Notes: generated from the sequence alone by a model not told the origin. A DNA stretch of 64,000 nt from Mustelus asterias (GCF_964213995.1 NC_135804.1:59210001-59274000); one strand, 5' to 3'. Shown: positions 809 through 35,458, numbered from the stretch's first letter. A program made the numbers and translations.

Positions 809-919
809 AGTCTGATGGCAAGTATCAGTACATTTGGATTTCTGGATGTACGGTGGGTGGATTGGCTTTTCTGATATTCATGGTCATAATTGGGACGAGA
901 GTCTGTCTGAAGAATACAG
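809..919 (+). CDS. Gene 0 (VJ-C1 inhibitory receptor paralog): transmembrane exon; V/C1 exons lie upstream of the window
   Basis: ttttgcag|AG acceptor and ACA G|gtaggt donor, phase 1/1. Translates (E)SDGKYQYIWISGCTVGGLAFLIFMVIIGTRVCLKNT, resembling the TM exons of genes A and B. Confidence 0.8.
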
Positions 920-2043
920 GTAGGTGCCACTTTACGCATTCGATTTTAATGCAAATCTTCAGGCGAACGGAGAGATCGTGCTCGGCGGCACTGTAAGCAT
1001 AAGGATTACGCAATTGTCACTTATTGGATGCAAGAAAAACCGAAATCGTGAGCGTCAACTGGGGGTGATTTTATAACGTAGTAATTGTCACAAAATTAGA
1101 ATTTAATTAATCTGATTATTTGTATATTACATTGGTAACGTCCACATTCTGGCAGATGGTAAATCAGATGGAGAAGGTTTATAATTCACTTAAAAATGTG
1201 AAAATCTGGCATCAGCAGAATACGATTAATCTGAAGACTGGCAAAAAATATCAAGTCACTGATTAATGTCCTTTAGAGACGGAGACAGATTCAACGCGGC
1301 CTGACCTATATGTGACTCCAGTCCGACAGAAGTATGCTCAATTTTTTAATAACTTCTGAAGTGGTCACGCAAGCCATTTAGTTGTATCTAGCTAATGACA
1401 GCCAGAGGGGGGACAACAAAGATGCCTGTCCGCGGCACCTACGTCTTGAGAATGAATGAAGCAAGATAGCAGCTTGACATTTTCTACACCCTTAATATTC
1501 TCACATCTTTCCATAAACAACATGGTCGAGCCGCCGCTTTGCAGGCTAAAGGATCAAATTTATTCCGACCCCGATAATGAATAATCACTCCGTATCTCTT
1601 TGAACAAACGTTTGGGTTTTATTATTAATTATCAAAATTGTATTCCGTTTTGCCATGGTCTAGAACACCCCACAGCTCGATCGTTCCCTCGTATGACACA
1701 CTGTCTTGTCCATGTGGTTTCACATCCAATATTAAAGCATTGTTAATCTGCATTAAATGGACATTTTATGTGCCCTGCCAACTAAATACTTGGTCGCTCT
1801 CAGTTTCACCTTTAGTAATATTAATAGAATCCAGGGATTTTTCTTTCCATCCCCGCTGTAGCCTGCGTCCGTGTGTGTTTCTGTGCGTGTTTCTGTGAGT
1901 GTCTCTGTTTGTGTAATTGTGTGCATGCGTGTTTCTCCAAGTGTGTGTTAAACTTTACCTAGCCTCTAAAAATACTTTTGAAGGCACAAATATGGAAAGT
2001 GACGAGAGATCGTAAGCATTGAAAGCATCTGCTTATTTTCCAG

Positions 2044-2087
2044 ATAAACAAGAAAGTGTGACAATAGTGAACACTGATGACGAGCTG
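2044..2087 (+). CDS. Gene 0: 44-nt cytoplasmic exon 1
   Basis: ttattttccag| acceptor and CTG|gtgggt donor. Translates DKQESVTIVNTDDEL. Length (44 nt) and phases (1/0) are identical to the equivalent exons of genes A and B. Confidence 0.8.
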
Positions 2088-2260
2088 GTGGGTTGACTTT
2101 TATATAAATGTTGTAATGAAGATACTTCGTCACGGTCTATTTAACTATCGGCATTTATCTCTAATTGATGCTTTATTAACATCGTGTTTTGAAAATCATT
2201 CGATGCTTGCTAGGATGCTGCTGAAGGTTGTTGAAAGAGGAAAAATGAAGGGGCAAATGA

Positions 2261-2621
2261 GGGCAGCACAGTAGTTAGCACTGCTGCCTCACAGCTCCAG
2301 GAACCGGGTTCAACCCCAGCCTTGGGCGATTGCCTACATGGAGTTTGCACGTTCTCTCCGTGCCGGCTTAGTTTCCTCCCAGAGTCCAAAAATATGCGGA
2401 TTAGGTAGATTGGTCATGCTACATTGCCCTTTAGTGTCCAAAAACGTGCCGTTTAGGTGGATTGACTTTGCTAAATTGCCCCTTATTGTCAAAAGGTATG
2501 TAAATTAGATGGATTAGCCATGACAAATGTGTGGGTTAAGGGATAGGGCGGGGGAGAAACGGAGTCAGATACTCGGTCAGAGAGTCGGTGCACATTCTTC
2601 TGCACTGTATGGATTCTATGA
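2261..2621 (+). mobile_element. Degenerate HE1-like SINE
   Basis: gggcagcacagtagttagcactgctgcctcacag head and ttctatga tail, with an internal partial duplication. Confidence 0.8.
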
Positions 2622-2770
2622 AGTTGATAGTTTCATTAACATACAGCGCTGTAATCGTCATATGTCGGACCATCTAAAGGTTGTTTTTGGGAGCTGAGAT
2701 TGCCGTTTAAAATGCTGAAATTGTATCTTGTCTGAACGCATCAATCAGCGAAAATCGGCAGGATGAAATG

Positions 2771-2990
2771 TAACCAAAAGAGAAAATGCTGGAAAATCTT
2801 AGCAGGTCTGGCAGCATCTTTAAGGAGAGAAAAGAGTTGACGCTTCGGGTCCAGACGACCCTTTGTCAAAGCTCTGGACTCGAAACGTCAGCTCTTTTCT
2901 ATCCTTACAGATGCTGCCAGACCTGCTGAGATTTTCCAGCATTTTCTCTTTCGGTTTCAGATTCCAGCATCCGCAGTAATTTGCTTTTAT
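2771..2990. mobile_element. Short palindromic element (Penelope-terminus-like or MITE-like) with 11-bp flanking direct repeat; second copy at 3473-3692, half copy at about 647-735
   Basis: Inverted arms of about 80 bp (agagaaaatgctggaaaatct...agattttccagcattttctct), flanked by aggatgaaatg at 2760-2770 and 2991-3001. Confidence 0.75.
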
Positions 2991-3177
2991 AGGATGAAAT
3001 GCAAGTTCCAATTGACACTGTATTTACCGACACATCTTTAAATATAGTCACGGTCAGTTCTGCATTTAATACGTAGGCCATGTCCCATTTATGTTCAGTG
3101 TTTAATCAGAAATTTTAATTCTGGTGACACCAATTAACTTACCAGATAACGAAATGTTTTCGTTCTGTCACACGCAG

Positions 3178-3342
3178 ACAGCTCAGCACAAGGTTGTGAC
3201 ATATGCTGCAGTGGATTTGAATAAGTCCACTAAAACTCCAAGACGTAAAGCTAAAGAGGAGGTGACAACGTACGCTCAGGTGCGTATGAGAAGTAGAGAA
3301 GGGACAGTATCGAACACCTGCGAAGAGCTAACAGTAATGTAA
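3178..3342 (+). CDS. Gene 0: terminal cytoplasmic exon with ITIM (VTYAAV) and ITSM (TTYAQV), copy 1
   Basis: ttctgtcacacgcag| phase-0 acceptor. Translates TAQHKVVTYAAVDLNKSTKTPRRKAKEEVTTYAQVRMRSREGTVSNTCEELTVM*. Confidence 0.85.
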   Translation, partial: TAQHKVVTYAAVDLNKSTKTPRRKAKEEVTTYAQVRMRSREGTVSNTCEELTVM

Positions 3343-3879
3343 TAGCGGAGTACTTGACGTTGCTGTGACTTTGTGTCGCATCGAAGGGCGTTTGTACATT
3401 TTCGCCGTTTAAAGTGCTGAAATTGTATCTTGTCTGAACGCATCAATAAGCGAAAATCGGCAGGATGAAATGTAACCAAAAGAGAAAATGCTGGAAAATC
3501 TTAGCAGGTCTGGCAGCATCTGTAAGGAGAGAAAAGAGTTGACGCTTCGAGTCCTGACGACCCTTTGTCAAAGCTCTGGACTCGAAACGTCAGCTCTTTT
3601 CTCTCCTTACAGTTGCTGCCAGACCTGCTGAGATTTTGCAACATTTTCTCTTTCGGTTTCAGATTCCAGCATCCGCAGTAATTTGCTTTTATAGGATGAA
3701 ATGCAAGTTCCAATTGACACTTTATTTACCGACACATCTTTAAAGATAGTCACGGTCAGTTCTGCATTTAATGCGTAGGGCATGTCTCATTGATGTTCAG
3801 TGTTTAATCAGAAATTTTAATTCTGGTGACACCAATTAACTTACCAGATAACGAAATGTTTCCGTTCTGTCACACGCAG

Positions 3880-4044
3880 ACAGCTCAGCACAAGGTTGTG
3901 ACATATGCTGCAGTGGATTTGAATAAGTCCACTAAAACTCCAAGACGTAAAGCTAAAGAGGAGGTGACAACGTACGCTCAGGTGCGTCTGAGAAGTAGAG
4001 AAGGGACAGTATCGAACACCTGCGAAGAGCTAACAGTAATGTAA
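3880..4044 (+). CDS. Gene 0: duplicated terminal ITIM/ITSM exon, copy 2
   Basis: Same acceptor and ORF as 3178-3342, offset by 702 bp, with a single M>L change. Confidence 0.6.
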   Translation, partial: TAQHKVVTYAAVDLNKSTKTPRRKAKEEVTTYAQVRLRSREGTVSNTCEELTVM

Positions 4045-4178
4045 TAGCGGAGTACTTGACGTTGCTGTGACTTTGTGTCGCATCGAAGGGCGTTTGTACA
4101 TTTTCCTGATAACCCTGACTTCAACTGCAAATTGGTAAAAATGACAAATCAATTATCCCTTTAAACATTTTTTTTCAG

Positions 4179-4300
4179 ATAAAACAAGGAACAGCCCGGA
4201 CAAGATAACACATACGGCTCTAGAATTGTTTGAATTTGAGACAGGGAGATTATTAGAAGTAACTAAAGAAGCGAACAATATACCGAACCACAGACGAAAA
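4179..4300 (+). pseudogene. Possible decayed paralogous ITIM/ITSM exon
   Basis: Strong tttttttttcag acceptor. Reads KITHTALEL (compare LTYAEVEL and VTYAAVDL), with a T-I-Y 23 codons later after a +1 frameshift. Confidence 0.35.
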
Positions 4301-6086
4301 CCCAAAGGGAGCAACAAAGGAGATATAGAGAGAAGCAGCAACCAAATGGAGTCACGAGCTTGGGCACAGAAGTCAGTTATTGTTGTATATCTGTGCCGCA
4401 TCTATATTAATTTCACTAAAAATGAAAGCTGGTGGGTTGGAAAAGAGCAGGGGCTCCAAGGTTTACTGGCTCAGCAGCGAAAGTATAAATAATTTATATG
4501 CGCATGTATATCAGTATTTACAATCACTGATGTGTAACATCGTAGTATATAAAAAATTATTTGATTCTTTAATTATTTGGAGATTATTAGTCAGCAATAT
4601 AAATACATGTAAGGAAAAACACTTTTAAAGTAAATTCTGTATTATTGGATATTTAGCTGTTATTCACTTTTGCAATTATAAGGTATACCAGTTGTCATAC
4701 TGTAACTATCTTATTATAATATTCAACAATGGATTTCTTAAACCTACTTACATAAGTTTTTGTATATTTCCTTCAAAAAGACGTTCATGTCTCAAAGAAC
4801 AACTGCAGTCTAATAACGTCAAGTGCAACATTATCTCATCAGTTTTTTATTTAAGCCTCGAAGGGTTCTATTTGTATGGTAGCATTTTTAAATACTTATG
4901 CAGCCACACAGCAAGGTACGTGCTCCTCTGCCCGACTTCGAATCTAACTATTTAAGGCTCTTCGGTTTCTCCCCCAATTATGGACACCTTCAAACATTTT
5001 TTACTCTCTACATTTACATTTTTTATTTTCTACATGGGCTTAACCGCCCAACCTACAATGACGATCAGTATTCCGCTGCAGGATTTCACATTCGCCATAC
5101 TCTCCTACGCATTATATAATAGCTTCAAAATTGGATGCTAACCCCTGAATTCTGATGAACCGATGACTTACATGTCTCATAAAGTAGAACAGCACCAAAT
5201 CATGCTGTGCAACACCGGTCATTAAATATTTAAATTCTAGAAGCTTGCTTTTATAATTGTGCTTTGTTTTCCATCTGGCAGTACTTGTGACTAGATTCAA
5301 CTTACTTCTACGTGGTGCCCTCTTTCATGATTTCTTATCAAACGCCTTCCGAAAACCCCTGTAAGTCACATCCACAAATTTCCTTTTTTTTTTACCTTTG
5401 TTATTTCTCAAAGAATTACCTAAGAGAAACCAAGCACAGTCTGCTTGTAAAAAAATGGGTGCTCATCGGGTCTTGCTGAATTTGTGTTTCTATAAAGGTC
5501 TGGCAAATTTTCTCAAGTGATAAAGTGTCCATTACTTGTAAGTAAATGTTCAAGAACTGTTTTAATACGATTGTGTTTCAAATTATCATCGCATTAGGCT
5601 TTGTCGTGCAATAACAGCACATGCTTCAGCAACCTTTCGATAACTAAATGATGAAACATTCGCGCGAGCAGTGAAAAAGTTAACGCGTGGAAGCGATCAG
5701 CTAAATGTTCCGCCTTGTGCTGTTACTATATCGACAAACATTGCGAAACATTAAGACAGGCGTGTTGATTTCTTAAAGCGAGACATGGCTCAATAGCTCA
5801 TTTCCGCTGCAGCAGTGCAAGCTTTAAATTTAGCTGTTAATTGCAACACTCTAAAAATATAAGCATGTACCCGGTGTTGCGAAGCGACGGTTATTGCACC
5901 TCACTTTCCAGTGTAATTGCAGAAACAGAAAATATTTACATGACACGGATACTATATTTGATATTTACCATTGTAAACTTTCCTAACTCATTATCAATTT
6001 GAATCTATAATTGCGACACGTTAAGGCGGCGAAATTGTTCCTATCATTTTCAACTTCCAATGTTACATCAGTAGGTTTAAGTAATG

Positions 6087-6419
6087 GGCGGCACGGTAGC
6101 ACAGTGGTTAGCACTGCTGCTTCACAGCTCCAGGGTCCTGGGTTCGATTCCCGGCTTGGGTCACTGTCTGTGTGCAGTTTGCACATTCTCCTCGTGTCTG
6201 CGTGGGTTTCCTCCGGGTGCTCCGGTTTCCTCCCACAGTCCAAAGATGTGCGGGTTAGGTTGATTGGCCATGCTAAAATTGCCCCTTAGTGTCTTGAGAT
6301 GCGTAGGTTAAAGGGATTAGTGGATGGATATGGGGGTAGGGCCTGGGTGGGATTGTGGTCGGTGCAGACTCGATGGGCCGAATGGCCTCTTTCTGTGCTG
6401 TAGTGTTTCTATTCTATGA
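6087..6419 (+). mobile_element. HE1-like SINE
   Basis: gggcggcacggtagcacagtggttagc A-box, ggttcgattcc B-box, and a CR1-like 3' tail (gggccgaatggcct...ttctatga). Confidence 0.92.
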
Positions 6420-12782: not shown

Positions 12783-12837
12783 ATGGCATCGAGGGTTGTG
12801 CTTCAGAGCACACAGGTCATCTGGATTATCTTGAATG
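12783..12837 (+). CDS. Gene A: leader exon
   Basis: aaATGG start. Translates MASRVVLQSTQVIWIILN, then G|gtattt. 55 nt, phase 1, the same length as the gene B leader. A 99-nt intron separates it from the V exon. Confidence 0.75.
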
Positions 12838-12936
12838 GTATTTACTATCGCCCATTCCTTGTCTTTACGTGTGTGTCTCGCTCTCGCTCTGTCTGTTTTT
12901 TTTATAACTAAAACGAATGTTCATTTTCTTTCATAG

Positions 12937-13254
12937 TTGCTGCCAATCCTCTGATTGAAGTGACCCAGGCCCCTGAAAATATCCATTCGATAATCGGGAC
13001 TACTATTGCATTCGACTGCACGTTTCCTACTTCTCAAGACGACTTAGATGTGAACATTCATTGGTGGAAACTCGGCGAAAAGGATTTGATGCGGCCAGGA
13101 TCAGATAGCAGGAAATGGTTTGCCACTGGGAATGGAAGAGCCTCCTTTCAACTCTTGAATATCAGTATTCAGGACTCTGGAGTCTATTACTGCGGAGTGA
13201 CACTTCAGGGAAACTGGGTCACAAATGGAAGTGGAACAACGCTCGTCGTCAGTG
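12937..13254 (+). CDS. Gene A: germline-joined VJ-type Ig V domain exon
   Basis: tttctttcatag| acceptor and AGT G|gtaaga donor. V-set hallmarks: VTQ.P, FDCTF, IHWWK, LLNISIQDSGVYYC and the J-like NGSGTTLVVS. Confidence 0.93.
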
Positions 13255-14935: not shown

Positions 14936-15247
14936 CTCTTCCAACTCCCGTGAAGATTCTTCCCCGCGCATCTGCAAGCAACGTACCCGATTCTTTGACG
15001 CTCGTGTGCGAAATGGCTTCATTTTACCCGGCGGGTCTAACTATCACTTGGTACAAAAATAATGGAAGCATTGAAAATGGAATTCACACCACCAAACAAC
15101 TCAGCAAAACTGGAATGTATGAAGCTTCCAGCTACTTTGAAGAGGCACAGCCGGTCCAGGGAGGGACTGTTTATGCCTGCCTAGTTTCTCATGCCGCTCT
15201 CCAGATTCCGGCCATGGCAAGTTACATAGTTCCCAATTGTAAACCAG
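14936..15247 (+). CDS. Gene A: Ig C1-set domain exon
   Basis: tctttcgccag| acceptor and CCA G|gtatga donor. C1 hallmarks: LTLVC, FYP, ITWYKN and YACLVSH. Confidence 0.93.
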
Positions 15248-18254: not shown

Positions 18255-18374
18255 GTCGTGACAGGACCTCGTCCTCATCTTATTTACGAATCTTTGGGTG
18301 CGCAGGCTTCGCATTGATGTTTTTGCTGCTGGTGATCTGCATTAGAAAGTTGTTCATATTCGGCAACGATAAAG
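18255..18374 (+). CDS. Gene A: transmembrane exon
   Basis: atctttcag| acceptor and AAA G|gtagga donor. Translates GRDRTSSSSYLRIFGCAGFALMFLLLVICIRKLFIFGNDK. Confidence 0.85.
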
Positions 18375-18871: not shown

Positions 18872-18915
18872 TAAGCAGACAGAGAAAAGACGAAGCAAAC
18901 AGAAATGGCAAATCT
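18872..18915 (+). CDS. Gene A: 44-nt cytoplasmic exon 1
   Basis: ttttgtgttttag| acceptor and TCT|gtaagt donor. Translates VSRQRKDEANRNGKS. Confidence 0.85.
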
Positions 18916-20373: not shown

Positions 20374-20524
20374 CAGAATTTGCCTAATGTAGTTTCGTGA
20401 CCCAATATGTAAATTCGTTAAGCCAAGGACGACTCAATTATTATGATGAAATCACTCCGTTTTATTATGCATTCTGTGGATAATTGAGGTTAAGGCCTAA
20501 CTTTATAAAACATCTCTTTTATAG

Positions 20525-20662
20525 ACCTTGCAAGACGCATTTGACAATCCGCTGACTTACGCAGAAGTCGAACTAATTAGTTCTGAGAAAAATGGAAGTC
20601 CGAGAGGCAAGGAAAAGGGCACGGAATACGCAGGCATTAGGAACGTACGACAAGAGAGATAA
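20525..20662 (+). CDS. Gene A: terminal exon with ITIM (LTYAEV) and ITSM (TEYAGI)
   Basis: ctcttttatag| phase-0 acceptor. Translates TLQDAFDNPLTYAEVELISSEKNGSPRGKEKGTEYAGIRNVRQER*. The six exons sum to 987 nt (328 aa plus stop). Confidence 0.88.
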   Translation, partial: TLQDAFDNPLTYAEVELISSEKNGSPRGKEKGTEYAGIRNVRQER

Positions 20663-21609
20663 GTGCCGAATGTCCACACAGAACAAAGTTTCAATTAATG
20701 CCAATATTCGCCTTTTACTTCTTTACGTCGACCGGATCTACCTTCATGACATTGGATGACTTCTCTTTTCATCAATACAATCTCTTATCACCCAGATTAA
20801 GTTGAGCCCAAAGTTACAGCTAAAGTTTTATAGCTGGCGGAATTTTACGCTTGCAATTACGACAGATTCGCACATTTGCAGAACAAAACGGAAGCAAATA
20901 ATTTACTGTCGGTGAATCTCTGCTTCAGTTTAACTTAGGCTGTAAAGGTCACCAAATACTTTAATTTCTATAGAATCATAACGTGATGGGAACGTGCCCT
21001 TTTCGGTTGTTAGCCTACTTATAAAATTCCTTGGAAAAGATTACTCCTCGTTTATTAATGAGGAACGTGTAGTTTTTTTAAGCGTTCTACTTTATACTTA
21101 TTGCTAAACATCCTAGCTCAACCTGGAAACCTAATCATATATTTGTGGAATTTGAAATTTCACCATCATGTTAAAAATGCCATCAATTTTAAAAGTATTT
21201 TAAAGTTTTAGCTTGTACCTGAACCCAAACATGACCGCGAATTTTGCTGTCTGCAAATGAAAATGAAAAATGAATCGTTCTGGTTTGCTGTGTGTGAATA
21301 ATTCAATCTGATTAGTGACTTACTCGTTTGTTTGCATTACCGATGATACAGCCGAAGCTAGTTCGTTGACTTGACATTGGATGTAAACTCGATCGACAAA
21401 GAGGAATGCTATGCAACAGAGATCGCTTTTTGAGCAGAAATTCTTTAAGGTCAGAGACCAGGAGCATTGCTTTGGTGTTGACTAGAAAACTCCCTGTGAT
21501 AGCACATCTTTGTCCATACATGATAGCAGCTGAGGAAATGCTTGTGATTAATGTGGCAGTGAAACTTGCGAGCTACACCAACAATTAATATTGTCTGTAA
21601 AAGATCTGC

Positions 21610-24682: not shown

Positions 24683-27600
24683 GATGAACTGGTAATGATT
24701 CATCTACATGACTCAGTACTGCAGTTCCAGTTGTGACGATACTGTGCCTTTAAAAAATATATTTGTGTTTTACTTCTTGTGCAAGATTTGGTTTAGCATC
24801 TACTTATCGGTGCTGTTTTGTCTGTAACCAGCAGCCCCTGTTGTTACTGCAGCAGCATAATTGATGTTAGTTGCTAAAGTGTTTGTTTTACTTTGGACTA
24901 AAGCAGTTCTGTTATTGCTGTTAGTTCTCGGGCTTTTCAGAGTAGGGCTTGATGAGGTTGATTGACAGGAAAAACCATGTGATTGGGAGGCACAACTCTT
25001 ACAGAGCGAAATAAGCTCATTTGCTGCTTGGGATTTTTAGAGCGAGGTAGTTCTATGGCAATTGACCATAATCAGTTCTTCACACTTTACGGCAAAATAT
25101 TCAACCGAGAAGGTGGTCTAGAGAACATACTGAAAGCACTTGTTCATATTTTCATCAGTGTGTATTGCTAGATGATTGTGAAAGGAAGTTCCTTCAACGT
25201 TCATTTACAAAAGTGGCAGCCCCAGCAGATTTTTATGAGTTTAGATCACACTTGTCCAACGTGCGACAGGCGTACGCGGCACTCGAAACCCCTCTATACT
25301 CCCCAGGAGCGGGTTTTCAAACAACCCGTCAAACAGGTAGGTTTGAATGGAAGCTGGGAAGAATCTATGTGGAATTCTCCTCCGTTGCTTTTTCATGTTT
25401 GCTGCCCATCAGCAAATATGGGAGAGAAACAATGTGCGAGTGGGGTGGCAGCAAACTCCAGCGGCGGGGAGTTCGGGGGCAGGGGAACAAGGGCAGGGGA
25501 GCTGAGATTTGGGGAACCAAGGGGTGGAAACGAGAGACTAGAAATGGGGCCCAGAGAGTGAATGTCCAGAGATGCAAGGAGCACAACGCGGCAGCCGATG
25601 ACCACGGACCCAAAGAGCAGGGCCGGGAAGCCGAGGACTGCTCAGAAAGGACATGGGGCCCGGGGAGTGAAGGGCCAGGGAGCCAACGAAAAGGACCGGG
25701 GAGCCGAGCATCCGGGAGCCAAGGACCACGAGCAAGGCACAGGAAGCGGAAGTGCCAGGGCGCGGGACCCAGGGGTCAACGGTAGCAGGAAGAGCCGGAT
25801 AGCACAGCTGCCAGGGAGCAGCTCTCGGAAGTCCGTTGAGGAGCCTAAGTACAACGCCGCAGGCATAAGGCGTCAGGAGCGGGGCCCGCTGATGCCTCAG
25901 TAAGTGAGTGACAGGAGATTTTGTGTGTGAGAGAGAGAGAAAGTTTGCGAGGGAGCAGTGGGGGGGGGGGGGGGGGGGGGCATTGGGGGGGAGAGATTGC
26001 GTGTGCACAGCGGTGCAGGGTAGAGAGTCTGAAGGATAGAGAGTGTGAGGGCAGCTTGGGGATTTTGAGAGGGAAGTGTTGGAGAGTATCTTAGAGGGAA
26101 GTGGGGTGTGTGAGAGCGGATACGCGATTACGAGAGGCAGGTGAGGGTGTACGGGGAGGACTGTGTGAGCATGATGTGTGTGTGTCGGGGGGGGGGCGGT
26201 AGGGGTTGAGAGAATGGAAGATGGTGGAAGTGAGTTTGTGTCAGCTGGTTTGAGAGTGTTGTCGGTGGTGAGGGATAATGTTGGGAGGTGAGAAAGTGTT
26301 CTTTGCGGGGAGAGCAAGTCGGCGGGGAAGGCGGAGGGAGGGGTGGGCTGGGGTGGAGGTGGGAGTGGATGAGGGGTTGGAATGTGTTCATAAATCTGGG
26401 TCCCTCCCAATATAAGGGCTCGCACATGCCCTCAGCCACAAATGCTACTGTGTATTTACATCCACTCTCACAGTGGATGATGATGAGTAAGTGAACACCC
26501 GGAGCCTTCGACTGGGCCAGAAACACACTCTCATCCTATTGTACTCTCATATTCATCTTTATTAATTAATCAAGAAAATTGTTTCTTCCTCTACCTCAGT
26601 ATTATTAAAATGCACATTGAACGTTGTGCCAAAGATTTCCGAAATTTGCACATTGGCCTATCGAATGAGAAAACGTGTCCCTCACCACACGCGGGAAGGT
26701 GTGACATGCGTGGTACAAATGAATCAATATGCAAGTCTGCAGATACCTGACAATCTGTATTTCAAACTATACATTTCATGTCTACTTGATGAAAATACAT
26801 AAAGTCCTAAAACACAGATAGGGCAGGATTGTCTGCTGCTTTAATCATTTTTGAATTGCCTTTTCCAATGGGCTGTCATGTTGATTGACAAGCGTTTGAC
26901 TTTGAATTCACTGGGTGGCTACAAACGGGTCCGTGCGCTTTTCTGCGTTAAGTTTTCGCTCTACGTCGTACATTCTTTCAGACTGATTTCATTTACAAAG
27001 ATGAGTATAAACAGGGAGTCGTACCGCTGATACCATCCTTATGCACCTATAATGGAAACAGCGCACACTCCGCTTGGAGGCGGACGCACAGTGTCGCTGA
27101 CCTCACCGTTGTGCGCCAGCTGATTCCTCGCCATCCAATCACTCTGGCTACACACCAGGCCCGTTGTCGATTCGCTCGTTGCCCAACTCACCGTCCTCGC
27201 TTGCTGCTTCTCTCATCTCCCCACTCATCACCCTCCTTGCAGTTTCGCTCAGCATCGCCTTGCCGCTTCGCTCGCCGGCACCTCCCCGCTTGGCACGTCA
27301 CCCATTTTACTTCCCACTCGCTGCTTCTCTCACAGCTTGGAATCAGTGAGGGAGTAGAGCGATGAATAGGGGGTCGGGAGCAACCAATTTAACCAATATA
27401 AATGTGCTGAAGTTTTTGTATGGATGAATAAGAAAAAAAGTCCTAATTCAACAAATGAAAACTCAGTGAATGTAGGTGGGCTAAACTGATTAAAGCGAAA
27501 CACTTACGCATTCTCACCTGCAACGATAGCGGGGGAGGCAACACCACACAGACCAGAAATAGAATCTCTTTTGAATATGAACATGAAGTGATGCTATAAT

Positions 27601-28947: not shown

Positions 28948-29118
28948 CTACTTGATTCTTGCTCCTGTATAGAGTTTCTCGATTACTTCACTTTTTTCTC
29001 TCTGCAGCTGGGCATAGTCTGTGCTCATTTCATTTTGCTGCATTTCCCCTTTTTTCTCTGCGCAAGCAAATGCAAGAGTCGCCTTTGTCTGCTCGTGTCC
29101 TTCTGTCGTGCGTTGTGT
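28948..29118 (-). CDS. Gene B: terminal exon (first ITIM Tyr replaced by Lys; TDYAQL retained)
   Basis: gttatattacag| phase-0 acceptor. Translates TQRTTEGHEQTKATLAFACAEKKGEMQQNEMSTDYAQLQREKSEVIEKLYTGARIK*. Confidence 0.8.
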   Translation of the reverse strand, partial: TQRTTEGHEQTKATLAFACAEKKGEMQQNEMSTDYAQLQREKSEVIEKLYTGARIK

Positions 29119-29868
29119 CTGTAATATAACCATTTAGAACTAATGTTAACTTAGCAATTTTGCAGGTCCGAAGTGCGCCTGTACAGACTATTATCGGAAG
29201 GTCGCAAAATGGCTTTGAAAACAACACACATCCAAAGTCACCAGAAATATATGCCCTTCGTTCTCTCATGATCGTCAATGTTAAATTCGTGATCTATAGT
29301 TTTTCTTATCTATTACTCATTCATACCTGAGTGTAGTCGGTTTTCTTGTCTGTATGGTTATGCCTTGAAACGTTACTGGTTCTGCTCCAATCTAGTGCAG
29401 CATAATGCACGACCTCCTCTTTTGCTGTCTGCATAGGCCAGAAAAAAATGTTTTATTATGTGGCCAGTTTATTTTCTTCTGCCGGTTCCACACACTCACT
29501 ATAGAAAAGGCAGATTGACCTGAGCTGCAAAACAATTAGACAAAGATCATTCGTTTTGATCTGCGTAAAGCGAATATTAACACCCTGGTCACTATATCCT
29601 CGAAGAATGCTATTTAAATGGAGAAAGGTTGCAAACCTTTGTGGTTCAGACGGTCTGAGTGTCCTGCACATGACGCACAAAAAGCTGGTATGCAGGTACC
29701 GTAAATGATTAGGAATGAAAATTGAATATTGGTGGTTATAGTGAGGCGATGTAATATTAAAGTAGGGAAATTTTACTGCAGCTGTACGCGGTCTGGGTGA
29801 ACCCACATCCGGAATGTTGTGTATAACTTTGGTCTCATATTTGAAATATATATACATAATTGTGTTAG

Positions 29869-30670
29869 GAACATAGAACATAGAACAGTACATAGAGCAT
29901 AGAACAGTACAGCACAGAACAGGCCCTTCGGCCCACGATGTTGTGCCGAGCTTTATCTGAAACCAAGATCAAGCTATCCCACTCCCTATCATCCTGGTGT
30001 GCTCCATGTGCCTATCCAATAACCGCTTAAATGTTTCTAAAGTGTCTGACTCCACTATCACTGCAGGCAGTCCATTCCACACCCCAACCACTCTCTGCGT
30101 AAAGAACCTACCTCTGATATCCGTCCTGTATCTCCCACCACGAACCCTATAGTTATGCCCCCTTGTAATAGCTCCATCCACCCGAGGAAATAGTCTTTGA
30201 ACGTTCACTCTATCTATCCCCTTCATCATTTTATACACCTCTATCAAGTCTCCCCTCAGCCTCCTCCGCTCCAGAGAGAATAGCCCTAGCTCCCTCAACC
30301 TTTCCTCATATGACCTACCCTCCAAACCAGGCAGCATCCTGGTAAATCTCCTCTGCACTCCTTCCAGCGCTTCCACATCCTTCCTATAGTGAGGTGACCA
30401 GAACTGCACACAATATTCCAAATGTGGTCTCACCAAGGTCCTGTACAGTTGCAGCATAACCCCACGGCTCTTAAACTCCAACCCCCTGTTAATAAAAGCT
30501 AACACACTACAGGCCTTCTTCACAGCTCTATCCACTTGAGTGGCAACCTTTAGAGATCTGTGGATATGGACCCCAAGATCTCTCTGTTCCTCCACAGTCT
30601 TCAGAACCCTACCTTTGACCCTGTAATCCACATTTAAATTTGTCCTACCAAAATGAATCACCTCACATTT
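29869..30670 (-). mobile_element. CR1-clade LINE 3' end (second subfamily) in the last intron of gene B
   Basis: ORF 29969-30661 with LVRPHLEYCVQFWSP, and an acatagaac-repeat tail. Confidence 0.93.
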
Positions 30671-30977: not shown

Positions 30978-31314
30978 ATAGAATCATATAATCATTGTAT
31001 CCCTACAGTACCGGAGGAGGCCATTCGGCCCATCGGGTCTGTGCCGACCACAATCCCACACAGGCTCTATTCCCGTAACCCCACACATTTACCTTGCTAA
31101 TTACCCCTGACACTCGGGTCAATTGAGCGTGGCCAATCAGCCGAACCCGCACATCTTTGGACTGTGGGAGGAAACCGGAGTACCCAGAGGAAACACACGC
31201 GGACACGGGGAGAACGTGCAAACTCCACTCAGACAGTGACCCGAGGCTTGAATTGAACCTGGGTCCCTGGCGCTGTAAGGCAACTGTGCTAACCACTGTG
31301 CCACCGTGCCGCCC
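30978..31314 (-). mobile_element. HE1-like SINE in the last intron of gene B
   Basis: Same head, core and tail as the other copies. Confidence 0.88.
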
Positions 31315-31824
31315 GCAGAGAGAAAAAAAGTATCGGGGTATGAACATACAGGGAAATGGAACTGAGAACAAAATCGGACCAACCATGACCTTGTTGAATG
31401 GCGGAAGATGTCGCAGGGCTGAATGACCTACTCCAGCTCCTGAGTCTAATGTTCCTATATTCCTACTATAATTAATAGTTAAAGTAGTCAACTTGCATTC
31501 CACAGAAATGTTAAAGCAATTATTCGTATTTTTTAATAATTTATGTTTCTTAAGTCCAATGAAGAAATGAAACCATCAGTTCCGAATTAGGCGCATTTTC
31601 AACGAAATACGCGGTTTTACTCTCTGTTAGATCACTTTTTAAAAAGTAGCAATGATGCGCCGAATGGAACATACATTGCTAAGCTGCACCTCAAGGCCAC
31701 ATTGTGATCGGACATATAGTTTTAGTAATTGGACGTAAACTGCTTTGACATGATTATAACCTATCTAATATATCAATGTTTCTTGACATTTCATCGGTAT
31801 GCCTCTATAAGTGGATAAGTATAC

Positions 31825-31868
31825 CGGTTCTTCACGGCGGATTCGATCAGTTACACACTCTTCTCTTC
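31825..31868 (-). CDS. Gene B: 44-nt cytoplasmic exon 1
   Basis: cttgctttacag| acceptor and CCG|gtatac donor. Translates GREECVTDRIRREEP, 44 nt, phase 1/0. Confidence 0.8.
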
Positions 31869-32495: not shown

Positions 32496-32609
32496 CTTCA
32501 TTATTTTGCAGTCGAAATCGCATCCGAATGACGACCATCAGCGCACAAAATCCAAGTCCAACCATAGCAAACCCAAGAACCCAGAGGTAAAGCGAGTTGA
32601 CGGTACTAA
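32496..32609 (-). CDS. Gene B: transmembrane exon
   Basis: aatcttgcag| acceptor and GAA G|gtaaga donor. Translates VSTVNSLYLWVLGFAMVGLGFCALMVVIRMRFRLQNNE. Confidence 0.87.
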
Positions 32610-33708
32610 CTGCAAGATTAATAAGAACATTGGTTATGACGGATGCTGGGTAAAATAGGCCCGAAGATAGTTTATTGTTTGAACTACAGGGGCAATATCA
32701 GGTGTTCGCTATCCAACAACAGCAATAAGAACGTTCAAAATGCAGCTCTTTGATGTAATATTTGAAATAACTTCCATAAATAGATTGAACATTTTGGATT
32801 AATCAGCGAAACGGTCTTTAAGGATCCCAGGACACTGTTTCGGGAGCATTGAAATGCGAAAGTGATCAAAGGTCAATGATCACTAACCGCGTTCTTGTTT
32901 TTGACCTTCCTTATTCAACATCATATCCATTGAGGAATTATGTGGCATTTTCACAAGCATGTCTTTAGTATCAGCGCAACATTCTGAATTGCAATAATGG
33001 GGTCAATACACAATGTCAACGATCTGTTCTATGTTTTAGTAAACTATGAAGGTCATTGAAACGTATAAGGCATGAACGGGCGAGTGCACTTTTTTCTGTC
33101 GGCGAAAGAATTGTTAACATTATTGTTTACCGAGCAGCCTTTACTGCAGCCAGGCTGCCTGCCTATCTTAAATGAGATTCATGAGAAAGAGGCGAATTCA
33201 TCCCGCTGTGGGTGGATGAAAGGCAGCAGTTGGCTATGGGTTTAATTTCAAAAATCTGCTATAGAAATGAAGTGGTGATGAGGATGATGTATGAATGGAT
33301 GGTGAGCGTTGGGGAGGAGGAGTTGGGATTGTGGAGTGAAGGAAAGGTTGAGTTGCTGGGGAGGTTAAGGTTGGAAACTACATTGGGTGAAGTTCGAGTA
33401 TAAGCAAACGTAAAAAAGACACAAACAAGCGCACAAAATCCTGGAATAGAAATTAAATTCTCCATATTATAATCATAATATGTCAAATGAAATAAATGTG
33501 AAATAAATACGGATGGACTGAGATCATTTGCTTGCCATGTGATGTAACTTGATTTTAAAATGCATGGTGTTCACATGAATTATTTAGTGCTTAAATTGAT
33601 GAATATAATGATTTCTTTAATATTTCCCATGACAGTGTTGTGTATTAACTTCATCAGTATTAACAGGCACAAAGAGTAGATTACATTACTTCACCTATTT
33701 AACAGTAC

Positions 33709-34047
33709 CTCTTTCCTCTTTTTGATCTGTCGACCTGGTAACTTCGTTACATTTAGAAACAGTATGCGTGACAACGACAGGAGTCTGGAGAGAGGCGTGA
33801 GATACCGAATAATTGGTGTCGCTTGGAACAGGTTCTACCACAGTCAAAGAGCTTGAGACTTTGTAGAGTCCCTCAGGATTTTGCATTTTATTGTTGCGTA
33901 TGCCTAATGCAATCTCTATTCCATTTTTATACCAAATTATGGTGAAGTTGTCCGGATAAAATGCAGCCGTTTTACACAAAAGAGTCAAAGACGCAGCGGG
34001 ATTCCGTCCACAAAATTTGGAGACAATCGTCAGTGGGGTTGGGGGCA
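33709..34047 (-). CDS. Gene B: Ig C1-set domain exon (second canonical Cys missing; 3' donor uncertain)
   Basis: ttctatttcgcag| acceptor. Motifs LTLLCK, FYPDN, IWYKNG and NYSVSHASL. The phase-1 donor I found before the in-frame stop is AGA G|gtactg, which is weak. Confidence 0.8.
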
Positions 34048-34910
34048 CTGCGAAATAGAAAATCAACCATTTAGGGTCACCCGGCAACAATGGGAGATAT
34101 TAGGCTTTACGCTTTTTTCACTTGATGTTAGTAGCACAATTGGAAAGTGCAATCTCCCGTTTCTTTCAATATTTCGCAGATCATCAGCACATATCTCAGC
34201 AGGTATCTTATAGACCCAGGGATCAATTAATTTTTACGGGAGTTAGCAAGGCTAAGACTCTGACTTGCTCAGCAGACAATTTGCAACGTTTTGGTATTCA
34301 ATATTTCACATTTATAATTTGAAAAAATACTTGAGGGCATTTGGCGTACTGCCTTCCTCCATATTTATAACAGAGACAGAGACAAATAATCTCCTCTTAT
34401 AACTAAGGACTTTGTCAATCTGGAACTGCTTTCATAACCCAAAGCAAGACAACTGGTGAATTACATTATGTTCAGGTAAACCACCGGGGTTTCAGAAACA
34501 CAATTCCTCTGTAAGTTTTGTTATTGGAGTTTTGTGAGGCGAAATGGCCTGCGTTTCAAAAATAGGCCAAGGGACTTTATGTGTTGGGAGAGACTCATTA
34601 AATAAATAATTTCAATCAGTCTGATGCTTCGAATTCATTCCGAAAATTCACTATCAAGCATCAGATGTATGAATGCCTTTGGAGCCGAAGTTTACCTGCA
34701 TAGTATTCATACGTGTTGCAATAGTCTGCCTGTGACATTGAATGTCTAAGTAGCACTTCTGTTCAAAGAACACGGATAAAACAACTAGTCGTGAAATGTA
34801 GTAATAGTCATGTTATTAAGGGCAAGTACGTGTAATAGGAAATTATGAAATTGCTCAGTTCATGTTCTATATATTTACGATTATTCCACTCTCCTGTTTT
34901 TCACACTTAC

Positions 34911-35231
34911 CATGAACAATTAGCTGTGATCCAGTTCCATTTCCCTGTACAACTCCTTGACACATCACCGTGCAGTGATAAACTCCAGAGTCCTGGAAAT
35001 TTGCGTCCAGCAACTGGAAGGTACTGAGCCAATTGTTCTTCAGGCTAAATCGTTTTCTGCCATTGGCGCCTTCTCGAAGGTATTCAGTCTCCCCATGTTT
35101 CCACCAATGCACTGTGATTCTAGATTCGTCTGGGCATCTGGGGAACTTGCAGGCGAAGGTGATGTTTCCTCCTGTGGATACAATCTGTTCTTTGGGCATT
35201 TGAGTCACTTTGAACGAAATTTGGTCCGCAT
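34911..35231 (-). CDS. Gene B: germline-joined VJ-type Ig V domain exon
   Basis: ttttctgacag| acceptor and CAT G|gtaagt donor. Motifs VTQMP, FACKF, VHWWK, FQDSGVYHC and GNGTGSQLIVH. Roughly 40% identical to the gene A V domain by eye. Confidence 0.92.
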
Positions 35232-35403
35232 CTGTCAGAAAATATAATCAATTCCAAGCGAGCTGTATTAGACACCACACGTGAAAGTGAAAGATAAAAG
35301 AAATAATCTCCAATACGAAATTACGAGTTAGTAAATAATTGTGGATGTTGCTTCGGAAGCATTTTATAAACTAAAGTACTTGGAATAACGGATCAGAATG
35401 TAC

Positions 35404-35458
35404 CTGTATAAATGTTCCCTTGCAGACTCAGGCAGAGAAGAACCAGGCACGCAGACAT
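35404..35458 (-). CDS. Gene B: leader exon
   Basis: Translates MSACLVLLCLSLQGNIYT, then G|gtacat. 55 nt, phase 1, with a hydrophobic signal core. Confidence 0.85.

What the first reader, a model, noticed from the sequence alone, without database searches (positions are those of the whole stretch)
809..35458. Cluster of non-rearranging VJ-C1-TM-ITIM/ITSM receptors (antigen-receptor-like inhibitory family) in a cartilaginous fish
Seen: three paralogs share one exon plan, reconstructed from GT/AG sites and phases. Genes A and B are complete; only the 3' half of gene 0 is in the window. Each complete gene has a V domain whose J-like G strand (NGSGTTLVV / NGTGSQLIV) is in the same exon, with no RSS, followed by a true C1-set domain. 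All three have an uncharged TM and a tyrosine-motif tail. Known: C1 domains are largely restricted to Ig/TCR/MHC/B2M, tapasin, SIRP and some B7-family proteins, and a germline VJ-C1 gene is the long-proposed substrate for the RAG transposon insertion. SIRPalpha is V-C1-C1-ITIMs, and NKp30 is a single VJ with no C1. Inference: this is a diversified (about 40% V identity) multigene inhibitory-receptor locus with a single V plus a single C1. It may be a chondrichthyan-specific family related to SIRP or to non-rearranging VJ-C1 genes, and automated annotation may label it only generically.
Basis: partly seen in the sequence, partly recalled or inferred. Interest (0 to 1): 0.85.

Follow-up and report, generated by a model that had tools for sequence, protein, structure and literature searches.

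The report
Shark V-C1 inhibitory receptor gene cluster
This stretch of shark DNA holds two and a half genes of a large, so far unnamed family of immune-cell surface receptors, found in sharks, rays and chimaeras, that look outside like one chain of an antibody or T-cell receptor but carry an "off-switch" tail inside the cell.

Summary
Gene A (+, 12783-20663) and gene B (-, 35458-28948) each have a leader, a V exon ending in a J-like strand, one C1 exon, an uncharged TM exon and ITIM/ITSM tail exons. Every junction is AG/GT, in phases 1-1-1-1-0. Gene 0 (809-4044) is a 3' half.

Corrections:
- Gene B's C1 lacks the F-strand cysteine that 40 of 40 relatives keep.
- Gene 0's last exon is tandemly duplicated.

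The genes belong to a family found in 16 chondrichthyan species: 48 of 48 named hits. RefSeq labels them inconsistently as tapasin-related, SIRP-alpha/beta-like, Ig-lambda-like, B7-H6-like, class II beta-like or CD276. Family C1 domains score at least 52.7 bits against gene A's C1; every other C1 fetched scores 36.6 or less. Gene A has orthologues in sharks and rays.

The most likely function is inhibitory signalling, paired with short-tailed Arg-TM relatives. Kinship to SIRP, B7-H6 or NKp30 is unresolved. I found no RNA data, and synteny could not be tested. My literature searches found no description of the family.

First-stage notes of this scan flag the same gene type at eight other places in this genome.

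The parts
12783..12837 (+). Gene A leader exon (ATG, 55 nt, ends in phase 1)
   Evidence: Read directly and checked by script. 88% identical over 17 residues to residues 1-17 of the Mustelus asterias model P0170.
12937..13254 (+). Gene A V exon with the J-like G strand (NGSGTTLVV) fused in the same exon
   Evidence: Pfam V-set 35.7 bits against a cut-off of 26. 94.3% identical to P0170 residues 20-124. AG/GT flanks.
14936..15247 (+). Gene A C1-set exon, with both canonical cysteines and a membrane-proximal cysteine
   Evidence: Pfam C1-set 48.2 bits against a cut-off of 21. The best single PDB domain is the Ig lambda constant domain, 34.5 bits. 92.2% identical to P0170 residues 126-228.
18255..18374 (+). 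Gene A stalk and uncharged transmembrane exon
   Evidence: Hydrophobic stretch found by script. Junctions checked. Matches family TM exons.
18872..18915 (+). Gene A 44-nt cytoplasmic exon (phase 1 to 0)
   Evidence: Junctions checked. Genes B and 0 have exons of the same length and phase. Matches P0169, P0184 and P0170.
20525..20663 (+). Gene A last coding exon: ITIM LTYAEV, ITSM TEYAGI, stop
   Evidence: 66.7% identical over 45 residues to the C-terminus (283-327) of the Chiloscyllium model P0172.
35404..35458 (-). Gene B leader exon (55 nt, phase 1)
34911..35231 (-). Gene B V exon with the J-like strand NGTGSQLIV
   Evidence: Pfam I-set 31.0 and V-set 29.8 bits. Junctions checked. 53-54% identical to P0168 and P0032.
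33709..34047 (-). Gene B C1 exon, lacking the F-strand cysteine because of a two-codon gap
   Evidence: Pfam C1-set 28.4 bits, matching model positions 14-75 only. The gap is seen against 4 of 4 aligned sequences. The cysteine is present in 40 of 40 relatives. Logan contigs agree with the window.
32496..32609 (-). Gene B stalk and uncharged TM exon
31825..31868 (-). Gene B 44-nt cytoplasmic exon
29327..29428 (-). Gene B tail exon with VHYAAL and TDYTQ. It ends at a CAG|GT donor. If it is not spliced there, a stop follows after one codon.
28948..29118 (-). It has the ITSM-like STDYAQL, but the ITIM tyrosine of relatives is a lysine here.
   Evidence: Family profile hit, E 0.032. Acceptor and frame checked. 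49% identical over 55 residues to the C-terminal end of Heptranchias P0075, E 3e-10 in a set of 217 proteins.
809..919 (+). Gene 0 stalk and uncharged TM exon. The V and C1 exons lie upstream of the window.
2044..2087 (+). Gene 0 44-nt cytoplasmic exon
3178..3342 (+). Gene 0 last coding exon: VTYAAV, TTYAQV, stop
   Evidence: 63% identical over 30 residues to P0042.
3880..4044 (+). Second copy of gene 0's last exon, inside a 702-bp tandem duplication (copies start at 2702 and 3404)
   Evidence: 97-99% identical copies. One residue differs between the two translations, M against L.

Best explanation
The region holds three members (two whole, one 3' half) of a chondrichthyan-wide multigene family of type I membrane receptors. 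Each chain has a split leader and a short V-like domain whose J-like G strand is encoded in the germline V exon, so no rearrangement is needed or possible. Then come one C1-set domain, a stalk, an uncharged transmembrane helix, and a tail with an ITIM followed by an ITSM.

Shown here: the gene structure, the domain types, the family, and its distribution among species.

Inferred:
- The membrane-distal V-like domain binds a ligand.
- The tail tyrosines are then phosphorylated by Src-family kinases and recruit SH2 phosphatases (SHP-1/SHP-2). This is the established behaviour of ITIM/ITSM tails, which I give from general knowledge. It damps activation of the leukocyte that carries the receptor.
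- Family members with an arginine in the TM and a short tail without motifs act as activating partners, which makes this a paired-receptor system.

Gene A belongs to a lineage kept as an orthologue in sharks and rays, which suggests a conserved ligand. Gene B is a divergent and probably decaying copy.
For: Gene structure:
- Exon plan, phases and motifs were read and checked.
- Pfam V-set and C1-set scores pass the curated cut-offs.
- No RSS-like site is present.
- Gene A's exons match consecutive blocks of the RefSeq models of Mustelus asterias (P0170: leader 1-17, V 20-124, C1 126-228, TM 230-261, cy1 268-280) and Chiloscyllium plagiosum (P0172: 269-282, then 283-327). Independent annotations therefore use the same junctions.

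Family:
- Searching gene A's C1 against 1.84 billion proteins gave 720 hits at E<=0.001.
- Of 178 fetched proteins with a C1 match, 95 have a best domain of 52.7 bits or more and 83 have 36.6 or less. None falls between.
- All 48 named family hits are chondrichthyan, from 16 species.
- In the C1 tree, 79 family rows are split from 24 other C1 rows with SH-aLRT 98. Gene A sits in a 12-row shark-plus-ray clade (96) next to Mustelus, at 92% identity.

Tails and partners:
- Relatives carry one to three ITIM/ITSM pairs.
- Some relatives (P0148, P0060, P0122) have an Arg-containing TM and short tails without an ITIM/ITSM pair.
- Unchecked first-stage notes report such a gene about 21 kb upstream of the window.

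Structure:
- The AlphaFold model of the Mustelus orthologue has mean pLDDT 83.6. It shows two beta-sandwich domains and one TM helix.
Against: - No RNA run holds this stretch. Transcription, splicing and the expressing cell type are therefore not shown for this species, and I do not know what evidence underlies the RefSeq models.
- No ligand, phosphatase binding or surface expression has been tested anywhere that I could find.
- Gene B lacks the invariant C1 cysteine and one ITIM tyrosine. It also has a long tree branch, 0.36 against about 0.13-0.23 for its neighbours, so it may not work.
- ITIM/ITSM-like strings also occur in proteins that act as ligands. B7-H6 is the best structural match.
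- Some ray orthologues of gene A are modelled with short tails and no tyrosine motif. Either those models are incomplete or the tail is not kept in this lineage.
Confidence: 0.72

Rival explanations
1. These genes are the cartilaginous-fish (co-)orthologues of SIRP (signal-regulatory proteins). They would be ordinary members of a described family that differ only by having one C1 domain fewer.
For: - RefSeq calls many members 'tyrosine-protein phosphatase non-receptor type substrate 1-like' or 'SIRP beta-1-like'.
- The language-model look-alike search lists SIRP-alpha clusters at 0.96, level with the two best unnamed V+C1 clusters.
- The family has inhibitory forms and Arg-TM short-tailed forms, as I recall for SIRP alpha and beta.
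- The tails repeat a pattern of the type xTYAxL ... TEYAxL/I/V.
Against: - Each gene here has one C1 exon. Of the 95 family proteins fetched, 93 have a single C1 match; the two others are a fused model and a near-identical duplicate domain.
- The V domain is short, with no C'' strand in the model.
- No SIRP chain appears in the 60 rows shown by each of three PDB sequence searches or in the 50 rows of the representative-chain structure search.
- The lungfish protein annotated as SIRP-alpha-like (P0120) has a best C1 score of 30.3 bits and falls with the outgroup in the tree.
- Tails of the ITIM+ITSM type occur in many unrelated receptor families (general knowledge).
Confidence: 0.15
2. The family belongs to the B7 / B7-H6 (NCR3LG1) group. 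Its members would then act mainly as cell-surface ligands for NKp30-like receptors, not as receptors.
For: - The best match of the whole ectodomain model among 48,161 representative chains is B7-H6 (4zso_E: Z 16.3, rmsd 3.6 over 192 residues). B7-H3, PD-L2, PD-L1 and butyrophilins follow at Z 14.5-15.1.
- RefSeq names several members 'natural cytotoxicity triggering receptor 3 ligand 1-like' or 'CD276 homolog'.
Against: - The Z values of the first dozen rows lie within about 2 units of each other. They include insect and nematode adhesion molecules, so the match reflects an extended two-domain shape.
- No B7-H6 chain is among the 60 rows of the V-profile or C1 sequence searches. PD-L1 V reaches only 44.8 bits.
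- The J-like GxG(T/S)xLxV strand, the paired Arg-TM forms and the multiple ITIM/ITSM units fit a receptor family better.
Confidence: 0.08
3. [quoted passage not shown] That would make it the closest living relative of Ig/TCR chains.
For: - The layout is that of a TCR or light chain: split leader, VJ in one exon, one C1, TM.
- The best single PDB domain for gene A's C1 is the Ig lambda constant domain (34.5 bits).
- All 50 listed Foldseek hits have E values of 7.5e-16 to 5.2e-15 and are antibody-complex or Fab entries, mostly light chains.
- The best single-domain structural match of the V domain is a skate IgNAR V (Z 14.6, rmsd 1.9 over 98).
Against: - The V profile matches I-set domains (Robo2, 29.4 bits for one domain) as well as it matches Ig/TCR V domains.
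- TM-scores to Fab chains are only 0.28-0.34.
- The family's C1 is no closer to Ig C domains than other C1 domains are: 36.6 bits or less.
- The literature I read names UrIg2 relatives, linked to the Ig/TCR complex, as the candidate (PMC12227049, abstract and section 7 read).
- Linkage of this cluster to the MHC or to antigen-receptor loci could not be tested.
Confidence: 0.07
4. The genes in this window are dead or dying copies in a repeat-rich region and no longer have a function.
For: - Gene B lacks the invariant C1 cysteine and one ITIM tyrosine, and has a long branch.
- Gene 0's last exon is duplicated.
- LINE fragments lie in the introns.
- No RNA evidence was found.
Against: - All 13 exons of genes A and B, and the three of gene 0, keep open frames and AG/GT junctions.
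- Gene A is 92-94% identical in protein to its Mustelus orthologue. It keeps every invariant residue of the family alignment that I checked, namely both cysteine pairs, the tryptophans and the J motif.
Confidence: 0.05

Closest known systems
SIRP family (SIRP alpha, beta, gamma). The architecture is recalled and was not fetched here.
   Same: - A germline V domain with a J-like strand, followed by C1-set domain(s).
- An inhibitory form with ITIM-type tyrosines, and short-tailed forms with a basic TM residue.
- Automated annotation and the language-model search point to it.
   Different: - One C1 instead of two.
- A shorter V, with no C'' strand in the model.
- No SIRP chain among the listed PDB matches.
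- Orthology and synteny were not tested.
B7-H6 (NCR3LG1) and other B7 or butyrophilin ectodomains
   Same: - An extended V plus C1-like two-domain ectodomain on a single-pass membrane protein.
- B7-H6 is the top structural match (4zso_E, Z 16.3).
- Some family members are auto-named after it.
   Different: - No sequence match among the listed rows.
- The family has a J-like strand, paired Arg-TM forms and repeated ITIM/ITSM units.
- B7-H6 is known as a ligand, not a paired receptor (general knowledge).
UrIg and UrIg2, the non-rearranging elasmobranch 'antibody-like' genes (PMC12227049, abstract and section 7 read; PMC10751288, passages read)
   Same: - Germline VJ exon with a split leader, followed by C1-type domains.
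- Present in cartilaginous fish.
- Auto-annotated under wrong names.
   Different: - UrIg2 has a VJ and nine to eleven C domains, and UrIg also has several C domains. This family has one.
- I found no ITIM tail described for them: 'ITIM' occurs 0 times in PMC12227049.
- The UrIg2 structure 9dmx_B ranks 40th (Z 13.6, rmsd 11.1).
- A white-shark protein with ten C1 domains (P0002) falls with the outgroup in the C1 tree. That it is UrIg2 is my guess.
NKp30 (NCR3) and PRARP, non-rearranging VJ genes. Both architectures are recalled; the PRARP paper (Fu et al. 2019, J Immunol 202:1992) was not held.
   Same: - V exon with a germline J-like strand.
- Arg-TM activating forms (NKp30) or an ITIM tail (PRARP, as I recall).
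- Discussed as relics of antigen-receptor precursors (PMC10751288, passage read).
   Different: - As I recall, both have a single V domain and no C1.
- No NKp30 chain is among the listed PDB matches.
- No sequence comparison with PRARP or shark NCR3 was possible here.
Teleost NITR and NILT, and other paired IgSF receptor families such as KIR, LILR, PILR and CD300 (recalled)
   Same: - Clustered, fast-diversifying multigene families.
- Inhibitory (ITIM) members and activating (charged TM) members.
- NITR V domains also have J-like motifs.
   Different: None of these has a C1-set domain next to the V (recalled). The family here is defined by V(J) plus one C1.

Membership tests
Non-rearranging V(J)-C1 IgSF gene (descriptive class) | V domain and J-like G strand (GxG(T/S)xLxV) in one germline exon, with no RSS | tested here: met
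   - The V exons run through NGSGTTLVV and NGTGSQLIV to the splice donor.
- The 64 kb has 0 RSS-like sites with a 12- or 23-base spacer at up to 3 mismatches.
Non-rearranging V(J)-C1 IgSF gene (descriptive class) | C1-set constant-type domain directly after the V | tested here: met
   - Pfam PF07654 scores 48.2 bits (A) and 28.4 bits (B) against a cut-off of 21.
- Gene A's best PDB domain is Ig lambda C.
- Gene B lacks the F-strand cysteine.
ITIM/ITSM inhibitory receptor (functional class) | Cytoplasmic (I/V/L/S)xYxx(I/V/L) followed by TxYxx(V/I), behind an uncharged TM. The consensus is recalled. | tested here: met
   - A: LTYAEV and TEYAGI.
- B: VHYAAL, TDYTQ(V) and STDYAQL.
- Gene 0: VTYAAV and TTYAQV.
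- Sequence only. Phosphatase binding was not tested.
SIRP family | Ectodomain of one V and two C1 domains (recalled) | tested here: not met
   - One C1 exon per gene; the family profile finds no second one.
- 93 of the 95 family proteins fetched have one C1 match.
SIRP family | Sequence closer to SIRP than to other V and C1 proteins | tested here: inconclusive
   - No SIRP chain in the rows shown (60 rows each; 50 rows). The lists are cut, and antibodies fill them.
- SIRP-alpha clusters score 0.96.
- No verified SIRP sequence could be brought into a tree.
SIRP family | Conserved synteny with the SIRP locus; binding of CD47 | not testable with these tools
The window holds only family genes and repeats.
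B7 / B7-H6 family | Sequence and fold kinship with B7-H6 V-C1 | tested here: inconclusive
   - B7-H6 is the top structural match (Z 16.3), but eleven further rows lie within 2 Z units.
- It is absent from the rows shown in the sequence searches.
UrIg / UrIg2 | VJ followed by several (three to eleven) C domains (PMC12227049, section 7) | tested here: not met
   - A single C1 exon per gene.
- UrIg2 chain 9dmx_B ranks 40th of the 50 rows.
Rearranging antigen receptors (Ig, TCR) | Separate V and J segments flanked by RSS | tested here: not met
   V and J-like parts are contiguous in one exon, and no RSS-like site is present.
PRARP / NKp30 (single-VJ receptors) | A single VJ domain without a C domain (recalled); sequence kinship | not tested
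   - The paper was not held, and no reference sequences were available from any tool.
- The architecture differs, since a C1 is present here.

The most novel reading that the evidence does not exclude
This family may be a membrane-bound, non-rearranging counterpart of a TCR or light chain that works as a disulfide-linked dimer. It has one VJ domain, one C1, a cysteine next to the membrane in gene A's shark lineage, and a cysteine at the start of the TM in 20 of 35 relatives. Inhibitory and Arg-TM partners could pair through their C1 domains. It would then descend from the same VJ-C1 stock that gave rise to SIRP and to Ig/TCR, showing what an antigen-receptor chain did before RAG: germline-encoded recognition wired to ITIM or adaptor signalling. 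My searches found no description of it.
Probability: 0.15. Interest if true: 0.85.

Novelty: new variant of a known kind. Interest (0 to 1): 0.6.

Why it matters
Cartilaginous fish are the oldest living group with Ig, TCR and MHC. C1-set domains are almost confined to that system, so every germline gene that joins a VJ-type domain to a C1 domain bears on how antigen receptors arose.

This family is large. First-stage notes list clusters up to about 417 kb upstream, one gene 8.5 Mb downstream, and five places on other pieces of this genome (unchecked). It is old, being shared by chimaeras, sharks and rays. It looks like a paired inhibitory/activating system.

It sits in public annotation under at least eight unrelated names. 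These would mislead anyone counting SIRP, tapasin, B7-H6, class II or light-chain genes in these species. Naming it, placing it on chromosome maps relative to the MHC and the Ig/TCR complex, and finding its ligands are all directly doable.

If it turns out to be a plain SIRP or B7-H6 relative, the value is a corrected annotation. It would also show that those families began with a single C1.

Tried and rejected
Tried without a useful result:
- RNA evidence. The look-up of sequencing runs (kind rna) returned only two runs of one sample, neither on record as RNA. I therefore used read laying only to check the assembly at gene B.
Notes by place cannot reach beyond the window. MHC-type notes lie on other pieces of the genome, which proves nothing.
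- Reaching bony-vertebrate relatives. The word-based search with a 20-sequence profile scored only the 8000 candidates with most shared words. It returned 14 family members plus three chance Ig-repeat proteins. Searches with P0017 and P0083 returned only chondrichthyan proteins.
- Foldseek against the PDB gave antibody light chains throughout, which is not discriminating.
- Literature. Eight searches found no paper describing a shark V-C1-ITIM family. From them:
  - I read the abstract, section 7 and passages of PMC12227049, and passages of PMC10751288.
  - All other papers were seen as search listings only.
  - Four relevant papers were not held: Fu 2019 on PRARP, Flajnik 2023 on UrIg, Ohta 2019 on the primordial immune complex, and Flajnik 2012 on the B7 family.
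  - A paper on shark NCR3 genes that I recall was not found.
  - So 'not described' rests on an incomplete library. Supplements were not opened.

Considered and rejected:
- Tapasin-related protein, MHC class II beta and Ig lambda, the RefSeq labels. The proteins have a V(J) domain, one C1 and an ITIM tail, with no tapasin N-terminal domain, no peptide-binding domain and no RSS.
- A second C1 or further family exons in the window: none.
- An assembly error as the cause of gene B's missing cysteine: not supported.

I never joined the predicted exons into one protein. All searches with window sequence were done exon by exon. Natural full-length orthologues returned by the tools (P0170, P0172 and others) stood in for the whole chain in the alignments, the structure prediction and the Atlas search.

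Full report
WHAT IS THERE

The window has no N and is rich in repeats. I read the three gene models base by base and checked every boundary by script.

Gene A lies on the + strand:
- a 55-nt leader exon from the ATG at 12783 to 12837
- a V exon, 12937-13254
- a C1 exon, 14936-15247
- a stalk and transmembrane exon, 18255-18374
- a 44-nt cytoplasmic exon, 18872-18915
- a last exon, 20525-20663

Gene B lies on the - strand and mirrors this plan:
- a leader, 35458-35404, also 55 nt
- V, 35231-34911
- C1, 34047-33709
- TM, 32609-32496
- a 44-nt exon, 31868-31825
- a tail exon, 29428-29327

Gene 0 enters the window with its TM exon (809-919), followed by a 44-nt exon (2044-2087) and a last exon (3178-3342).

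All internal boundaries are AG...GT, in phases 1, 1, 1, 1, 0. The V exons contain the whole domain, including the G strand (NGSGTTLVV in A, NGTGSQLIV in B), right up to the donor. The window has no RSS-like site with either spacer at up to three mismatches, where about 0.8 would be expected by chance. The TM segments carry no charge inside the hydrophobic run. The tails carry an ITIM-type and then an ITSM-type tyrosine: LTYAEV/TEYAGI in A, VHYAAL/TDYTQ in B, VTYAAV/TTYAQV in gene 0.

Pfam puts the domains above its own cut-offs. V-set scores 35.7 bits for A and 29.8 for B, against a cut-off of 26. C1-set scores 48.2 for A and 28.4 for B, against a cut-off of 21. A and B share 42.9% of 98 V positions and 41.8% of 98 C1 positions. 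A profile of the whole family, run over all six frames of the 64 kb, finds these exons. Below E = 1 it finds only one other hit, the extra gene B exon described below. A chance-level match at 22858-22950 (E 6.1, 3.4 bits) is the only further row.

THREE CORRECTIONS

1. Gene B's C1 exon has a two-residue gap exactly where relatives have the F-strand 'x-Cys'. That cysteine is present in 40 of 40 aligned family members. Logan contigs of two runs from one sample cover 33600-33905 with no gap and no other letter. The gap is therefore in the DNA of that animal and is not a slip of this assembly. These runs may come from the same sample the window was assembled from, so they give no independent evidence about the species.
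2. Gene B's tail exon ends at a CAG|GT. About 200 bases on, behind a TATTACAG acceptor, lies an open exon (29118-28948). It is 49% identical over 55 residues to the last 55 residues of a Heptranchias relative and ends at the same point. It keeps the ITSM-like STDYAQL, but the ITIM tyrosine of the relatives is a lysine here.
3. Gene 0's last exon occurs twice (3178-3342 and 3880-4044) in a 702-bp tandem duplication. The two translations differ by one residue.

Gene B also has the longest end branch of its group in the C1 tree: 0.36, against 0.13-0.23 for its near neighbours. I read gene B as a copy under relaxed constraint, although every frame and junction is intact.

WHAT FAMILY IT IS

I searched gene A's C1 exon alone against 1.84 billion representative proteins. 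This gave 720 hits at E<=0.001, of which the best 150 were listed. Among 178 fetched proteins that match this C1, the best single-domain score is 52.7 bits or more in 95 and 36.6 bits or less in 83, with nothing between.

The high group consists of proteins of about 200-500 residues with the same layout:
- a V domain with a striking W-W-K/R after the first cysteine
- N-G-T/S-G-S-x-L-x-V
- P-P-T-P-L at the start of C1
- Y-T-C-L-V-S-H in C1
- an uncharged TM
- one to three ITIM/ITSM pairs

The low group consists of multi-C1 proteins of pig, turtles, alligator, carp, trout, lungfish and sharks.

Every family protein whose name I could look up is chondrichthyan: 48 of 48. The 48 come from 16 species:
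- Callorhinchus milii
- Heterodontus francisci
- Heptranchias perlo
- Mustelus asterias
- Cetorhinus maximus
- Scyliorhinus canicula and S. torazame
- Chiloscyllium plagiosum and C. punctatum
- Amblyraja radiata
- Leucoraja erinacea
- Mobula hypostoma and M. birostris
- Hypanus sabinus
- Pristis pectinata
- Narcine bancroftii

Their automatic names are a muddle:
- tapasin-related protein(-like)
- tyrosine-protein phosphatase non-receptor type substrate 1(-like)
- SIRP beta-1-like
- immunoglobulin lambda-1 light chain-like
- NCR3 ligand 1-like
- HLA class II DP-beta or DO-beta-like, and BoLa DQB-like
- CD276 homolog
- uncharacterized

GENE A HAS ORTHOLOGUES

The Mustelus asterias model P0170 ('tapasin-related protein-like') is 94.3% identical to gene A's V exon and 92.2% to its C1 exon, so the window comes from a close relative of that shark.

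Gene A's six exons match consecutive blocks of P0170 (1-17, 20-124, 126-228, 230-261, 268-280). The last two also match the Chiloscyllium model P0172 (269-282, then 283-327). Independent gene models thus use the junctions predicted here. I cannot tell what evidence those models rest on.

I built a C1 tree of 103 rows on 103 columns, using the quick method. With so few columns many forks stay open. The 79 family rows are split from 24 other C1 rows by a branch with SH-aLRT 98. Gene A sits in a 12-row clade (96) containing six shark and three ray species. Within that lineage the V domain has changed more than C1 in 8 of 9 comparisons.

SHAPE

I folded the Mustelus orthologue, a natural protein returned by a search, with a 40-sequence family alignment. 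Mean pLDDT is 83.6 and pTM 0.64. The model has two beta sandwiches and one long helix at 235-276. Between strand C (57-63) and the next strands (78-83, 86-91) there is no C'' strand and hardly any C' strand. This agrees with another first-stage note on this window that the V is short.

- Foldseek against the PDB lists 50 entries at E of 7.5e-16 to 5.2e-15. All are antibody complexes or Fab fragments, mostly light chains, with TM-scores of only 0.28-0.34.
- The search over 48,161 representative chains puts B7-H6 first (4zso_E: Z 16.3, rmsd 3.6, 192 residues). Rst/Neph1/SYG-1 D1-D2, B7-H3, PD-L2 and butyrophilins follow at Z 14.5-15.9.
- For the V alone, the best match is a skate IgNAR V domain (8ht3_A: Z 14.6, rmsd 1.9, 98 residues).
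- For the C1 alone, the best matches are class II beta-2 domains (7zfr_B, Z 14.3; 8w84_D, Z 13.9 at 30% identity).
- UrIg2 (9dmx_B) ranks 40th. No SIRP or NKp30 entry is among the 50 rows.

Rows within one Z unit count as tied, and a family that is not listed is not excluded.

In sequence, gene A's C1 is nearest to the Ig lambda constant domain (34.5 bits for that domain). A 14-sequence V profile matches single I-set domains (Robo2, 29.4 bits) as well as it matches PD-L1, TCR or antibody V domains. No SIRP, NKp30 or B7-H6 chain appears in the 60 rows shown. The language-model look-alike search gives two unnamed V+C1 clusters and two SIRP-alpha clusters, all at 0.96, followed by kappa-like light chains at 0.95. 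That is a lead, not a test.

HOW IT MOST LIKELY WORKS

Shown: these genes are built to give a type I membrane protein with a V-like tip, a C1 base and an ITIM/ITSM tail.

Inferred from the established behaviour of such tails in many receptor families: ligand binding brings the tail near Src-family kinases, the phosphorylated ITIM/ITSM recruits SHP-1/SHP-2, and activation of the cell is damped.

The family also contains members with an arginine early in the TM, an acidic or histidine end and a short tail (P0148, P0060, P0122). That is the usual mark of activating partners that signal through an adaptor. First-stage notes, which I did not check, describe such a gene about 21 kb upstream of this window, and further clusters or single genes about 249 kb and 417 kb upstream, 8.5 Mb downstream and on other pieces of the genome.

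So the best reading is a large paired-receptor family, of which this window shows three inhibitory members. Gene A's conservation from sharks to rays argues for a conserved ligand. The 40%-identity paralogues argue for several ligands.

WHAT IT IS NOT, AND WHAT STAYS OPEN

- It is not a rearranging receptor: there is no RSS and the VJ is fused.
- It is not UrIg or UrIg2, which have many C domains and for which no ITIM is mentioned in PMC12227049.
- It does not meet the three-domain definition of SIRP that I recall.
- Whether it is the sister of SIRP, of B7-H6 or of NKp30/PRARP could not be decided.
- No RNA run holds the stretch.
- Eight literature searches found no description of the family. 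Four of the most relevant papers are not in the library and supplements were closed. 'Undescribed' is therefore provisional.

VERDICT

This is a real, correctly observed gene cluster. It belongs to an old, large, lineage-wide receptor family that public annotation scatters under wrong names and that I could not find in print. Its kind, a germline VJ-C1 inhibitory and paired IgSF receptor, is known from SIRP. Its single-C1 layout, short V and restriction to chondrichthyans make it a new variant of that kind.

Interest is moderate to high for comparative immunologists. It would be higher if synteny or trees tie the family to the antigen-receptor or MHC stock.

The predicted exons were never joined. 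All searches with window sequence were done exon by exon.

Noticed in passing
window 2702-4100: A 702-bp tandem duplication (copies start at 2702 and 3404, 97% identical over the 300 nt compared). It carries gene 0's last coding exon twice. Each copy also holds a short hairpin-like repeat element.
   Followed up: partly
window 16447-17686 (+), 29969-30661 (-), 10389-10805 (+), 22780-23139 (+), 42149-43004 (-), 48386-50112 (+), 56724-57443 (+): Reverse-transcriptase ORF fragments of LINE type. Two of them lie inside introns: gene A's C1-TM intron and gene B's 44-nt-exon-to-tail intron. They look like ordinary repeat load.
   Followed up: no
window 59095-63137 (-): A long, nearly continuous run of ORFs on the minus strand of 201, 325, 154, 160, 104, 220 and 137 aa. 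It looks like one fairly young LINE copy with endonuclease, reverse transcriptase and an ORF1-like part.
   Followed up: no
window 362-595, 2260-2400, 6011-6289, 20137-20361, 31137-31500, 49552-49911: Copies of one short interspersed element in both orientations. Their ORF artefacts share the same 'GSIPGLGHCLCGVCTFSP'-like translation.
   Followed up: no
window 52000-56000: A G+C-rich block (0.53-0.57, against about 0.41-0.45 elsewhere) with low-complexity, proline- and glycine-rich ORFs on both strands. No family exon lies here. Its nature is unknown.
   Followed up: no
window 25100-26600: A purine- and pyrimidine-skewed, low-complexity stretch giving long ORFs on both strands (up to 295 aa, proline-rich). 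Probably a simple-repeat artefact.
   Followed up: no
window 33890-33905, 34040-34059, 34884-34899, 35029-35058, 35092-35121, 35230-35240: Logan's short-read contigs of the sample break repeatedly inside gene B's V and C1 exons, with raised summed word depth there. One C>T difference at 34158 appears in one of the two runs. This could come from near-identical paralogues or from heterozygosity.
   Followed up: no
protein P0024 (Amblyraja radiata) and protein P0168 (Scyliorhinus torazame): P0024 has two nearly identical C1 domains in tandem, and P0168 has two different V domains before one C1. These are either real exon duplications and fusions in those species or merged gene models of neighbouring family genes.
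   Followed up: no
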